From Podarcis melisellensis (Eukaryota), in assembly GCA_964234715.1 (NCBI GenBank), contig OZ174285.1: a DNA stretch of 64,000 nucleotides; one strand, written 5' to 3'. The notes under the pieces were generated by a model. The model saw only the letters and a list, made by a program, of their open reading frames with translations. It searched no databases and was not told the origin of the DNA. Shown here piece after piece: positions 5,102 to 27,488 of this stretch (position 1 is its first letter; each line of letters starts with the position of its first letter). The position numbers and the translations under genes were made by a program.

Positions 5102-5180
5102 GTAAGTTTATTATTATTATTTGGTTAATGCACTGCTCTGTATATTTTTATGCTCATGGGAAAAAAAATCAGGGCTGTCT

Positions 5181-5656
5181 NNNNNNNNNNNNNNNNNNNN
5201 NNNNNNNNNNNNNNNNNNNNNNNNNNNNNNNNNNNNNNNNNNNNNNNNNNNNNNNNNNNNNNNNNNNNNNNNNNNNNNNNNNNNNNNNNNNNNNNNNNNN
5301 NNNNNNNNNNNNNNNNNNNNNNNNNNNNNNNNNNNNNNNNNNNNNNNNNNNNNNNNNNNNNNNNNNNNNNNNNNNNNNNNNNNNNNNNNNNNNNNNNNNN
5401 NNNNNNNNNNNNNNNNNNNNNNNNNNNNNNNNNNNNNNNNNNNNNNNNNNNNNNNNNNNNNNNNNNNNNNNNNNNNNNNNNNNNNNNNNNNNNNNNNNNN
5501 NNNNNNNNNNNNNNNNNNNNNNNNNNNNNNNNNNNNNNNNNNNNNNNNNNNNNNNNNNNNNNNNNNNNNNNNNNNNNNNNNNNNNNNNNNNNNNNNNNNN
5601 NNNNNNNNNNNNNNNNNNNNNNNNNNNNNNNNNNNNNNNNNNNNNNNNNNNNNNNN
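5181..5656. other. Assembly gap of 476 N, probably hiding one MCTP1 exon
   Basis: Run of N. The orthologous peptide between ...PLLS and VKAS... is not found elsewhere in the window. Confidence 0.95.
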
Positions 5657-5847
5657 GAATGCTCTTCTGCCACTGGCTGAGACACCCACTTTGCTACTAC
5701 TGCTGCTAATGTATACACAAGCATAAGTTTCTGTGCCTCACATTTCTGGATTATAGTCTTGGCCCCATGACTTTGAAATGCTACAGTGATGATTCTATAT
5801 ATATTTGTGCAGTTCTCAGTTCCTAAACAATATATTTTGATATATAG

Positions 5848-24155: not shown

Positions 24156-25381
24156 CATTTACATGGTGTGGCTGAAGGTGTTGTAGATGTGGTGTGGTAG
24201 TAGTTGTTGCTGTTATCTTCACCAGGTTGCCCAGGGCTGGCCTTAGGGAAGTCAGTAGTCAAATGTAAAATGTAGAGTACTTGTGTTGCCACCCCCCGGA
24301 CCTCTCAAGGAGGAGGCACACAAAGAAGGGTCTTGGAAGACGATCTCAGGGTCCAGGTAGGTTCATTTGGAAAGAGGCGGCCCTTGAGGTATTGCGGTCC
24401 TGAGCCATTTAAAGCTCTATAGGTCAAAACCAGCACATTAAATTGGGCCCAGAAACTAATTGGTAGCCAGTGCAGTCGGACCAGGATCTGTGTAATATGC
24501 TTAAACCCTCTTGCTCCGGTGAGCAACCTGGCTGCTGAATTCTGCACTAGCTGAAGTTTCCAAACCATCTTCAGAGACAGCCTTGCATATAATGCATTGC
24601 AGTAATCTAACCTTGAGGTTACCAGAGCATAGACAACAGTAGTTAGAGTATTCTTTTCCAGAAAGGGGCGTAGCTGGGCCACCAGCCAAAGCTGACAGAA
24701 GGCAGTCTGGGCCACTGAGGCCACTTGAGCCTCGAGTGACACCAAAGGATCCAGGAGTAACCCCAGGCTACGAACCTGCTCCTTCAGAGGAAGTGTAACC
24801 CCATCAAGAGCAAGTGATCTCCCACCCACCCGGTTTAGGGAACCACCCTCTAACAGTGCCTCAGTCTTGTCTGGATTGAGTTTCAGTTTGTTGGCTCTCA
24901 TCCAGTCCATTACTGAGGCAAGACACTGGTCCAGCACTTCCACTACCTCACCTACAGATGTAAAGGAGAAATAGATCTGAGTGTCATCAGCATACTGCTG
25001 ACAATGTACTCCAAAACCTCCGGATAACCGGAGCAGTTTCGTGTATATGTTAAACAATGTAGGGGATAGGATTGAGGCATGCAGAACCCCACATTGAAGA
25101 TTCCACTGGGCTTAAAAGCATTCCCCAAGTAACACCCTCTGGGAAGGACCTTCCAAGTAGGACTGGAACCACCACAAAGCAGTGACACCCACCCCTAGTT
25201 CGTACAGCTGCTCCGAAAGGATACCATGGCCAATGGTATCAAAAGCCATTGAGAGGTCAAGAAGAATTAACAGGGACATGTTTCCCTTGTCTCTCTCTCA
25301 GCAGAGGCAACCAAAGCAGTTTCTGTGCCAAAACCGGGCTTAAACCCCATTTGAAATGGATCCAGAAAATCAGTTTCTTCC

Positions 25382-26516
25382 GGGGTGCCACTAGAGGGCG
25401 CATCGGAAGATGGCTGACAATAACATCTCTCCGACCCACATGAGGTAATTTGGAGGCTATGTTGGGAGTAATTAGCCTCCCTACCCCCCCCCCCAGGATG
25501 GTGGGGGGGACTGTCCTTGCCTGCTGTGCCCTATACCACCCCCGAATTTGTGGGGATGGGGGCACTAGGCACAAAGCCCTCCTGTGGGATTCCAGCACTC
25601 CTGGACGCCATCCCTGATCCGCGCCACTAGCTGCAAGAACTTCAAACGAAACAATTTGGATGAAGGAATGCACATATTTCAAGGAAGGAGGGGGAGTAAA
25701 GATTGCTAACAGAAGAGATTTCTGATAAAACAAGACAAGAATAAAACATGAGAAGATATGTCAAGATACGGTATGGCAAATGAATGATGGGGGAGGGGGA
25801 AAAACTTTCCTTTCTTTCCTTATGTGATTAAACAAGAATCCCCTCCCCTCACGAGTCAGAATTGTCGTTTTAAGGACTTAAGCTGTGGATTTAAGGCTGT
25901 GTGGAGATAAACTTTCGAACCAAAGCATGTTTTAAGAAGAGCGTGGAATGTATAAGAGCTTTGGAATGACGCAGTTAAAAATGCCGTCGCCATATTGGGA
26001 AGTTCTGTCGGAGGACTTAAGTCTGAGAGGAGAAATAGAGAAATAGAGCTGTTTATATGTTGAGGGTGAAACTCCTCAGAGGGACTTAAGAGCGACAGTT
26101 TTACGAGATCAATGATGGAAAGAGCGAAGTTATCTATGAAGGTGATGATATATGGAAACCATCTCAATTTGAGGATTGGAAGAACGGAAAATTCACACAG
26201 GATTATTATTGGTGTTTATTGGCTTAAGGAGACTATCAGAAGAGATCATAAAGAAAAAAGAGAAAATATATGAACAAGATGTGATGTGGAAACAGCAATA
26301 TAAGATTGGATAGAATTATGAACTCTGTTTGGACTGATTTAGATTGATTTGGACATTAACGCAGTAGCAAGAAGATGATCAGAATCCCACTTCGGATCTT
26401 GAAATATGGGTTCTCCCAACAAAATTTAAAATTCGGCTTTGTAATTCGGAATTTATGTGATGTGATTTAATTTGATTTGATTGGCCGGTTAATAAACATA
26501 TTTTTTAAAAAAAAAT
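25382..26516 (+). mobile_element. 1.13-kb non-autonomous polyadenylated retroposon with L1-type insertion hallmarks, nested in the L2
   Basis: 17-bp TSD gaaaatcagtttcttcc at 25365-25381 and 26517-26533. G-rich start, AATAAA at 26491-26496, A-tail at about 26507-26515. No RT motifs. Confidence 0.88.
25386..25414 (+). promoter_or_regulatory. CTCF core motif (tgccactagagggcgca) followed by a YY1-type motif (aagatggc)
   Basis: Direct match to the CTCF consensus CCAC(C/T)AG(A/G)(G/T)GGCGC and to the YY1 core AAGATGGC. Binding is untested. Confidence 0.6.
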
Positions 26517-26707
26517 GAAAATCAGTTTCTTCCAAAAGTGCCTGGATCTGGTCTGCAACCACTCGCTCCAGAACCTTGCTCAGGAAAGGGAGATTAGCAA
26601 CTGGCCAGTAGTTAGTTAGGTTTTCCAAAACCAGGGAAGGTTTCTTAAGGAGTGTTTTTACCACTTCCTCCTTCAAACAGGCAGGGACCACCCCCGCTCA
26701 TAAAGAG

Positions 26708-26816
26708 TAAAGTTACCAGATTTCCTGGTCCCCAGATTTACAAATCAGCCCCCATACAAAATCCATTGAAGTTGAAAAGTGTCCCCGGATTCATTGAAAA
26801 AAATCTGGTAACCTTA
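26708..26816. mobile_element. 109-bp hAT MITE (Blackjack/Tip100-like termini) nested in the L2
   Basis: TIR taaagttaccagattt ... aaatctggtaacctta. Perfect 8-bp TSD ataaagag at 26700-26707 and 26817-26824. Confidence 0.92.
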
Positions 26817-27070
26817 ATAAAGAGGCATAGTTCACCTTCCTGGCCCAGCCAGCTGTTCCCTCCCTACTAGTTTTTATCAGCTAAGAGGGGCACCCTGACT
26901 GATCCGAGCACCTTGTCCACATCCTCAAGCCTTACCAACTGAAACTCATTCAACAAGACTAGACTGTGCTCTGGACACCCCATGAGATTCATCTGCTCTA
27001 ACAAGAGAGTAAGGGTCTTGGTGGATGCAAGCAATTTTATCCTCAAAATGCTTTGCAAACATGTCATAAC

Positions 27071-27223
27071 AAATGTGGAGTTTTTTGGGGGGGCTATTGA
27101 GTTGTTTTTATTCTGATTAAGTATTTTGTGGTTTTATATTTTTACCTTATTCTGTGAACCACCCTGAGACCTCCAGTTATAGGGTGGTATATAAATTCAA
27201 TAAATAAAAATAAAACAAATAAA
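27071..27223 (+). mobile_element. 3' UTR and tail of an L2-type LINE in sense orientation, probably the same insertion as 24285-27070
   Basis: T-rich UTR, stem-loop aaccaccctgagacctccagttatagggtggtat, (taaa)n-like tail. tacttgt flanks the composite at 24278-24284 and 27224-27230. Confidence 0.8.
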
Positions 27224-27488
27224 TACTTGTTCCAACAGAAAATAACCCCTCTCTTTTTCTAGATGCATTTTCACAGCTCATCTTGTAATCACAATTCGGA
27301 TACTTTACTGGCATAGTTATAGTATACATACATACCCGAGTATATACAAAGGGATGACTCCAAGCATTTGCTAGGATGTGAGCAAAGGACTATATGTTCT
27401 GCTACCCAGGACATGCTCAGATCACATGCTTGGTCTGTGATTCCTTTGTGTCTCGTATTGGGGACAATGTGTTGCACATTCTGACCAG

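What the first reader, a model, noticed from the sequence alone, without database searches (positions are those of the whole stretch)
25382..26516. Complete 1.13-kb RT-less retroposon with a CTCF + YY1 head, possibly an undescribed non-autonomous family
Seen: an insert splits the L2 RT coding sequence and is bounded by an exact 17-bp TSD starting gaaaa. It has a GGGG start, AATAAA and a short A-tail, all hallmarks of target-primed reverse transcription by L1-type machinery. It shows no Pol III A/B boxes, no RT motifs and no long + strand ORF, only a purine-rich body that looks like decayed coding sequence (for example EINDGKSEVIYEGDDIWKPSQFEDWKNGKFTQDYYWCLLA). Established: mammalian L1 5' ends carry a YY1 site (AAGATGGC) near the start. 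Inference: this is a full-length, Pol II-driven, L1-dependent non-autonomous element (HAL1-like or a long SINE-like family) that I cannot assign to a named family.
Basis: partly seen in the sequence, partly recalled or inferred. Interest (0 to 1): 0.75.

Follow-up and report, generated by a model that had tools for sequence, protein, structure and literature searches.

The report
Many-copy non-coding L1-type lizard retroposon
The 1.1-kb insert is a real, complete copy of an abundant, transcribed jumping element in lizard genomes that codes for no protein and probably borrows L1 enzymes; this kind of element is known, and the scan has probably met this family before.

Summary
A 1135-bp insert (25382-26516, + strand) has an exact 17-bp target-site duplication, AATAAA and an A9 tail. 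It splits an L2-type reverse-transcriptase frame that reads straight through once the insert is removed.

It is not a one-off processed pseudogene. Public lizard runs hold roughly 6,000 genome-equivalents of it in one species and about 1,100 in the species that matches the window. The host L2 is equally abundant in both. Coverage is level from head to tail.

In a stranded RNA run of another species, reads over the insert are about 20:1 on one strand. L2 reads are about 1:1.

No protein, Pfam or Rfam signal and no tRNA-like head was found, and three internal T4 runs argue against Pol III. The "decayed coding sequence" idea has no support.

The first ~212 nt fold into a closed four-armed structure (z -4.0). 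They carry a perfect CTCF core and an L1-style YY1 core.

Best reading: a non-coding, probably Pol II-transcribed, L1-dependent non-autonomous retroposon. It is not HAL1-like, because it has no ORF1.

Earlier notes of this scan describe what appears to be the same 1.1-kb family elsewhere in this genome. Dfam and Repbase could not be consulted, so "undescribed" remains open. The shared 5' end could not be checked directly.

The parts
25365..25381 (.). 5' copy of the 17-bp target-site duplication GAAAATCAGTTTCTTCC
   Evidence: 17/17 identical to 26517-26533
25382..26516 (+). Complete 1135-bp copy of a many-copy, ORF-less, A-tailed retroposon family
   Evidence: summed contig depth averages about 4.7e5 (X1) and 8.5e4 (X2) against about 75 in the single-copy flank, with sharp falls at both ends; no coding signal.
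25382..25593 (+). GC-rich head (59% G+C). It is predicted to fold into a closed four-armed RNA structure in which nt 1-18 pair with nt 195-212.
   Evidence: -117.6 kcal/mol, z -4.0, and 0 of 200 shuffles fold as well; the full-length fold keeps the four arms and the inner closing stem, and only the outermost 5' pairs change partner; the minus strand folds nearly as well (z -3.8), so the strand is not decided by the fold.
25388..25401 (+). CTCF-type core motif CCACTAGAGGGCGC
   Evidence: the only match in the window, with 0.02 expected by chance. Binding was not tested.
25407..25414 (+). YY1-type core AAGATGGC at +26 to +33 of the element
   Evidence: Resemblance to the CAAGATGGC of L1 5' ends is taken from PMC5381506. 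The motif alone is not significant (0.55 expected).
26491..26496 (+). Polyadenylation signal AATAAA
   Evidence: the tail starts 11 nt downstream
26507..26516 (+). Short A tail (A9 followed by T)
26517..26533 (.). 3' copy of the 17-bp target-site duplication
24305..25364 (-). Host L2/CR1-type LINE, RT part downstream of the insertion point (as read on the minus strand)
   Evidence: RVT_1 E 3.1e-08. YADD and DLSMAFD motifs; the frame continues across the empty site.
26534..27227 (-). Host L2/CR1-type LINE, part upstream of the insertion point. Repeat depth ends at 27227.
   Evidence: depth falls from 2e5 to about 75 at 27228....VLERVVADQIQALLEETDF.

Best explanation
The insert is one full-length copy of an abundant, lineage-specific, non-coding retroposon family of lacertid-type lizards.

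The element is transcribed on its sense strand, most likely by RNA polymerase II from a promoter inside its own GC-rich head. The GGGG start with a YY1-type site at about +26 resembles L1 5' ends. The transcript is cleaved and polyadenylated at its own AATAAA. Its poly(A) end is then used in trans by the endonuclease/reverse transcriptase of an L1-type LINE.

That enzyme nicked the T-rich bottom strand of the target (5'-GATTTTC/TGG) inside an old L2. It copied the RNA by target-primed reverse transcription and left a 17-bp target-site duplication.

Shown: the insertion anatomy, the empty site, the high copy number, the level 5'-to-3' coverage, the strand-biased RNA, and the lack of coding signal.

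Inferred: Pol II, the internal promoter, L1 as the driver, and any role for the folded head or the CTCF and YY1 motifs.
For: Insertion anatomy: TSD, AATAAA and A tail.

Empty site: the L2 RT frame is restored across it, and the exact empty junction is seen in paralogous L2 copies, in 3 contigs of X1 and 1 of X2.

Copy number: mean summed contig depth over the insert is about 4.7e5 in X1 and about 8.5e4 in X2. Contigs in the unique flank 27227-27400 have depth 75-76. That gives about 6,000 and about 1,100 genome-equivalents at 88% likeness or more. The L2 flanks are nearly equal in the two runs (for example 4.5e5 vs 4.4e5), so the 5.5-fold difference is specific to this family and points to lineage-specific amplification.

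Coverage: the head bins (4.7-5.9e5) are as deep as the body, so there is no LINE-like 5' truncation gradient.

Spread: runs under 10 organism labels from 11 studies hold 21-54% of its 31-mers.

RNA: in raw reads of run X23, first mates lie on the minus strand at a mean depth of about 29, against about 1.5 on the plus strand, across the insert. Over the L2 part 24400-25005 the ratio is about 1:1.

No coding or known RNA signal: Pfam, Rfam, tRNA and protein-representative searches all found nothing.

Against Pol III: T4 runs at 25868, 25930 and 26099.

L1 likeness: L1 elements of mammals start G2-6...CAAGATGGC (a YY1 site), and all vertebrate L1s end in AATAAA plus poly(A) (PMC5381506).
Against: No second copy could be fetched. 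It is therefore not directly shown that other copies start at the same base as 25382. The only support is that earlier scan notes give a near-equal length (1138 letters) for one copy of a pair in what appears to be the same family.

Summed contig depth is only a rough proxy for copy number.

The library type of X23 is not on record, so 'sense' rests on the usual dUTP convention. Most X23 reads match only in part, because they come from a different species.

The target TTTTC/T is close to the L1 consensus TTTT/A but not identical to it.

No L1 from this genome was available for comparing heads or tails.

The A tail is short, and this copy differs from the family majority at 15 or more sites, so it is not a very young copy.
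Confidence: 0.8

Rival explanations
1. The 1.1 kb is not a family unit of its own. It is the 3'-terminal part (a long 3' UTR) of a longer L1-type or ORF-bearing element, and this copy happens to be 5'-truncated at 25382.
For: Depth only measures what lies on the window sequence, so it cannot show that other copies end at 25382. Vertebrate L1 3' UTRs can reach 1-2 kb (PMC5381506). The last 100 nt are about twice as deep as the rest.
Against: The head is as deep as the body. The copy starts with GGGG plus a YY1-type core, as L1 5' ends do. The head forms a self-contained fold that begins at nt 1. Earlier scan notes give 1138 letters for one copy of a pair of full-length, TSD-flanked copies of what appears to be the same family (not checked here).
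Confidence: 0.08
2. It is an ORF-deleted derivative of the 1.9-2.0 kb ORF-bearing 'half-L1' family, or of an L1 of the same genome, and keeps only that element's head and tail. This concerns origin and is compatible with the best explanation.
For: Earlier scan notes report 1.9-kb L1-dependent elements with a 203-aa ORF that 'keep the head and tail of an L1', and a 2-kb ORF-less element with YY1 and CTCF-like motifs at its 5' end (unchecked leads). The + strand is A-rich and there is a short T-rich (TGATT)5 repeat before the AATAAA, as described for lizard L1 3' UTRs.
Against: No sequence of those elements was available. Nothing in this 64-kb window resembles the insert. No remnant of any ORF was detectable.
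Confidence: 0.3
3. It is a processed pseudogene, that is, a single retrocopy of a host mRNA or lncRNA.
For: It has the shape of a Pol II transcript: a GC-rich start, AATAAA, an A tail and a TSD.
Against: Depth over the whole insert is 1e3-1e4 times single-copy depth in two species, and the sequence is held by runs under 10 organism labels. No contig or read evidence for exon junctions was listed.
Confidence: 0.02
4. It is a Pol III-transcribed SINE with a structured RNA-gene-derived head.
For: The roughly 212-nt closed multi-arm head recalls SINE heads derived from small RNAs.
Against: ARAGORN finds no tRNA. Rfam finds nothing even at E<=10. There are three internal T4 runs, the first at nt 487. 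The length is 1135 bp, and the element has its own AATAAA.
Confidence: 0.03

Closest known systems
SVA / LAVA-type Pol II non-autonomous retroposons of hominoids
   Same: About 1-2 kb, non-coding, with its own AATAAA and A tail and a 7-20 bp TSD. Mostly full-length copies. Dependent on L1 proteins in trans. Lineage-specific bursts.
   Different: No composite make-up from other repeats and no VNTR (one search shows only four tiny repeats). Unrelated sequence. Found in squamates, not primates. The head has an L1-like GGGG/YY1 start.
HAL1 (half-L1) elements of mammals
   Same: RT-less elements with L1-type ends that parasitise L1.
   Different: HAL1 keeps ORF1. Here the longest stop-free + stretch is 67 aa and has no Pfam hit, so the defining feature is not met.
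L1 5' UTR start with YY1 site (mammals: G2-6..CAAGATGGCGGA; anole clade 1: ..ATGGCG; PMC5381506)
   Same: A G-run at the first base, and AAGATGGC in the same orientation a few tens of nt downstream.
   Different: The site lies at +26 rather than about +13. No ORF follows. Homology to a lizard L1 5' UTR was not tested.
CTCF-site-carrying SINEs (for example rodent B2)
   Same: A repeat family whose copies carry a strong CTCF core motif, which could seed many sites.
   Different: B2 is a short Pol III tRNA-derived SINE. Here binding is untested, and it is not shown that the motif is in the family consensus.
The 1.1-kb ORF-less L1-type family noted earlier by this scan in the same genome (s1-494029, s1-494030, s1-494044)
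   Same: Length (1138 vs 1135 letters), no ORF, A tail, perfect TSDs, and a stable four-armed head of about 210 nt.

Membership tests
L1-dependent non-autonomous retroposon (TPRT product) | Flanking target-site duplication of about 7-20 bp | tested here: met
   17/17 exact
L1-dependent non-autonomous retroposon (TPRT product) | 3' poly(A) tail after a polyadenylation signal | tested here: met
   AATAAA at 26491-26496 and an A9 tail at 26507-26515
L1-dependent non-autonomous retroposon (TPRT product) | T-rich first-strand nick site (TTTT/A type) | tested here: inconclusive
   The bottom strand reads 5'-GATTTTC/TGG. This is close to the consensus but not identical, and it is a single event.
L1-dependent non-autonomous retroposon (TPRT product) | No RT or endonuclease of its own | tested here: met
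   No Pfam hit in any + or - piece and no RT motif inside the insert
L1-dependent non-autonomous retroposon (TPRT product) | Many dispersed copies with common 5' and 3' ends | tested here: inconclusive
   Many copies: yes. Depth falls sharply at both ends at 100-nt resolution. A common first base was not shown directly.
L1-dependent non-autonomous retroposon (TPRT product) | Mobilised in trans by L1 ORF2p (with or without ORF1p) | not testable with these tools
   Needs a retrotransposition assay
HAL1 | Retains an L1 ORF1 | tested here: not met
   No ORF. No Transposase_22 or other Pfam hit at E<=10.
Pol III SINE | Head derived from tRNA, 5S, 7SL or snRNA with an internal promoter, and no internal Pol III terminators | tested here: not met
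   ARAGORN found none. Rfam found none. T4 runs at 25868, 25930 and 26099.
Processed pseudogene | Single or few copies derived from one spliced host gene | tested here: not met
   About 1e3-1e4 genome-equivalents
SVA-like composite element | Built from pieces of other repeats plus a VNTR | tested here: not met
   TRF finds only four small repeats of 2-5 units. No similarity to other repeats in the window. Repeat libraries were not available.

The most novel reading that the evidence does not exclude
The family is more than a passive passenger of L1. Its conserved, folded 5' head would be a functional module in one or both of two ways. As RNA, it could recruit the L1 machinery, giving an Alu-like strategy in a 1.1-kb Pol II transcript. 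As DNA, it could have seeded thousands of oriented CTCF/YY1 sites across lacertid genomes in a recent, species-specific burst. That would be a reptile counterpart of the SINE-driven CTCF waves known from mammals.
Probability: 0.12. Interest if true: 0.7.

Novelty: new member of a known kind. Interest (0 to 1): 0.35.

Why it matters
Squamates keep many L1 lineages active, but their L1-dependent parasites are poorly catalogued.

This family is a useful marker of recent L1 activity. It has thousands of copies, it is transcribed, and its abundance differs about five-fold between two species while an old L2 is equally abundant in both. It is also a potential source of insertion polymorphisms.

If the CTCF core is in the family consensus and is bound, the family would also be a source of lineage-specific chromatin-boundary motifs.

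For this locus the practical message is simpler. The CTCF motif in the gene desert arrived with a common repeat and is not a conserved regulatory element.

Tried and rejected
Looking for other copies:
- In the window: blastn (word size 9) and nhmmer found none.
- Through ORFs: the search for homologous proteins with the 103-aa minus-strand ORF found 0 hits.
Orthologous loci and other individuals could therefore not be fetched, and the presence or absence of this insertion in relatives could not be dated.
- Exact-pattern scans for the head and the tail in metagenome contigs, and for the head in viral contigs, found 0.

Coding hypothesis:
- Pfam on all + strand pieces of 35 aa or more at E<=10 found 0.
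- Pfam on the minus-strand ORFs found 0.

Known RNA families:
- Rfam at E<=1 over 3 kb, and at E<=10 over the head, gave only chance-level hits.

Other checks:
- No L1 lies in the window for a comparison of heads or tails.
- Literature searches found no description of such a lizard family, but they cannot show that none exists.
- No consensus of the family was built, because no copies were available.
The N run at 5181-5656 was left alone.

Full report
**1. What is in the sequence**

The stretch 25382-26516 (1135 bp) is bounded by an exact 17-bp direct repeat, GAAAATCAGTTTCTTCC, at 25365-25381 and 26517-26533. The insert begins GGGGTGCC. It carries AATAAA at 26491-26496 and ends in A9T at 26507-26516.

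Both flanks belong to one L2/CR1-type LINE on the minus strand:
- Pfam RVT_1 on 24305-25057, E 3.1e-08.
- YADD and DLSMAFD motifs.

I translated the two flanks separately. The upstream piece ends ...ALLEETDF with one base left over. The downstream piece starts after two bases with DPFQMGFKPGFGTETALVA. The RT frame is therefore continuous (…F-L-D…) once the insert and one repeat copy are taken out.

In contigs of two lizard runs, other (paralogous, about 10% diverged) L2 copies show exactly this junction. The joint is 25364->26517, with 17 letters fitting both sides, in 3 contigs of X1 and 1 of X2.

**2. Single retrocopy or repeat family?**

- Runs under 10 organism labels from 11 studies hold 21-54% of the insert's 31-mers.
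- I laid contigs of X1 (organism A) and X2 (organism B) on 24400-27400 at 88% likeness or more. Summed depth over the insert averages about 4.7e5 in X1 and about 8.5e4 in X2.
- The unique flank 27227-27400 is covered by single contigs of depth 75-76.
- That gives roughly 6,000 and 1,100 genome-equivalents. The tool warns that summed depth is not a copy number, so these are orders of magnitude only.

The X2 contig over the unique flank is identical to the window (0 differences in 174 nt). The X1 contig differs at 11 of 147 positions. Organism B is therefore the window's species or very close to it, and organism A is another species.

The old L2 is equally deep in both runs (for example 4.5e5 vs 4.4e5 and 2.8e5 vs 2.4e5). 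The 5.5-fold excess of the insert family in A is thus family-specific and points to lineage-specific, fairly recent amplification.

Depth falls sharply at both ends of the insert. The head (4.7-5.9e5) is as deep as the body, and only the last 100 nt are about twice as deep. This is unlike the 5'-truncation gradient of LINEs.

This copy differs from the family majority at 15 or more listed sites. Four of them are CpG in the majority and TpG or CpA here. So this copy is not brand new, despite its perfect TSD.

**3. Transcription**

Raw reads of a stranded-looking RNA run of another species (X23, organism I) cover the insert with first mates on the minus strand at a mean depth of about 29, against about 1.5 on the plus strand. 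Over the L2 part 24400-25005 the two directions are about equal.

With the usual library chemistry this means sense-strand RNA. Even if the convention were reversed, a 20:1 bias summed over many dispersed copies is hard to get from read-through of host genes. It argues for transcription directed by the element itself.

Caveats:
- The library type is not on record.
- Most reads match only in part.
- In that species the segment 25729-25786 is replaced by other sequence (loose ends).

**4. No protein, no known RNA**
- The longest stop-free + stretch is 67 aa.
- All + pieces of 35 aa or more, and the minus-strand ORFs, have no Pfam hit, the former even at E<=10.
- The 103-aa minus-strand ORF has none in the word-indexed search.
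- ARAGORN finds no tRNA, and Rfam finds nothing beyond chance.
- Three T4 runs (25868, 25930, 26099) would stop Pol III long before the AATAAA.

The purine-rich look (57.5% purine, 32.5% A) is the A-rich sense-strand composition also described for L1 (PMC5381506). It is not evidence of coding.

**5. The head**

The first 259 nt are 59% G+C at their 5' end. They fold at -117.6 kcal/mol, with z -4.0 against dinucleotide shuffles. The structure is closed and four-armed, with nt 1-18 pairing with nt 195-212. The MFE of the whole element keeps the four arms and the inner closing stem. Only the outermost 5' pairs change partner there.

The complementary strand folds nearly as well (z -3.8). With a single copy no covariation can be tested.

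The head holds a perfect CTCF core at 25388-25401. It is the only match in 64 kb, with 0.02 expected. It also holds AAGATGGC at +26..+33, which is not significant on its own.

According to PMC5381506:
- Nearly all mammalian L1s start G2-6..CAAGATGGCGGA, a YY1 site needed for accurate initiation.
- Anole L1 clade 1 starts ..GGTGN8ATGGCG.
- All vertebrate L1s end in AATAAA plus poly(A).

The head therefore works like an L1 start. Homology to a lizard L1 was not testable.

**6. Mechanism proposed**

The model has three steps:
- Sense transcription starts at the GGGG, from an internal promoter of L1/YY1 type, read by Pol II.
- The transcript is polyadenylated at its own signal.
- L1 proteins capture the poly(A) RNA in trans and copy it by target-primed reverse transcription at a T-rich nick (5'-GATTTTC/TGG on the bottom strand), which gives the 17-bp TSD.

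By analogy with Pol II-driven substrates in human cells, ORF1p may be needed as well as ORF2p (PMC2666806). The steps from the promoter onward are inference.

**7. Relation to earlier notes of this scan**

The same genome has notes on the following:
- a '~1.1 kb non-coding, polyadenylated, L1-mobilised retroposon family (two full-length copies)' of 1138 letters (s1-494029);
- its four-armed head of about 210 nt (s1-494030);
- long-range helices (s1-494044);
- 1.9-kb ORF-bearing 'half-L1' elements;
- a 2-kb ORF-less element with YY1 and CTCF-like motifs at its head.

My copy matches the first in length, anatomy and head fold, so the scan has most likely found this family before on other DNA. 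I could not compare the sequences.

- the copy-number and between-species contrast;
- the paralogous empty site;
- the strand-biased RNA;
- the negative coding searches.

**8. Limits**
- No repeat library is on hand.
- As a result, the common 5' end, the partner LINE, the family name and the age of this insertion remain open.

**Verdict**

This is a real, ordinary-in-kind but well-defined element, and a new member of the known class of L1-dependent non-autonomous retroposons. Interest is moderate to low. It would be higher only if the head proves functional.

Noticed in passing
window 26700-26824: A 109-bp MITE-like insert (26708-26816) with 16-nt terminal inverted repeats (TAAAGTTACCAGATTT / AAATCTGGTAACCTTA, 94% complementary). 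It is flanked by an exact 8-bp duplication, ATAAAGAG (26700-26707 and 26817-26824), and is nested in the same L2. Depth there is very high (8e5 in X1, 6e5 in X2). The 8-bp TSD suggests a hAT-type element.
   Followed up: partly
window 25874, 26013, 26082: The 9-mer GGACTTAAG, which contains the palindrome CTTAAG, occurs three times in the middle of the retroposon. Its meaning is unknown.
   Followed up: no
window 25729-25786: In RNA reads of another species (X23), this segment of the family is replaced by unrelated sequence (loose ends on both sides). DNA depth also dips here in X1 and X2. This is a variable middle region of the family.
   Followed up: no
window 24400-27400: The retroposon family is about 5.5 times more abundant in organism A than in organism B, while the host L2 family is equally abundant in both. 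Organism B matches the window's unique flank perfectly; organism A differs there by about 7%.
   Followed up: partly
window 5117-5726: The five overlapping 'ORFs' of 176-201 aa on both strands are an artefact of the N run at 5181-5656. They have no Pfam hit. The N run was left untouched.
   Followed up: yes
window 25898-25918 with 26176-26199; 26212-26224 with 26487-26499: The full-length MFE fold predicts long-range helices of 7-13 bp that bracket the middle and the 3' part. An earlier scan note claims conserved long-range helices in this family. This was not tested here, because there is only one copy.
   Followed up: no
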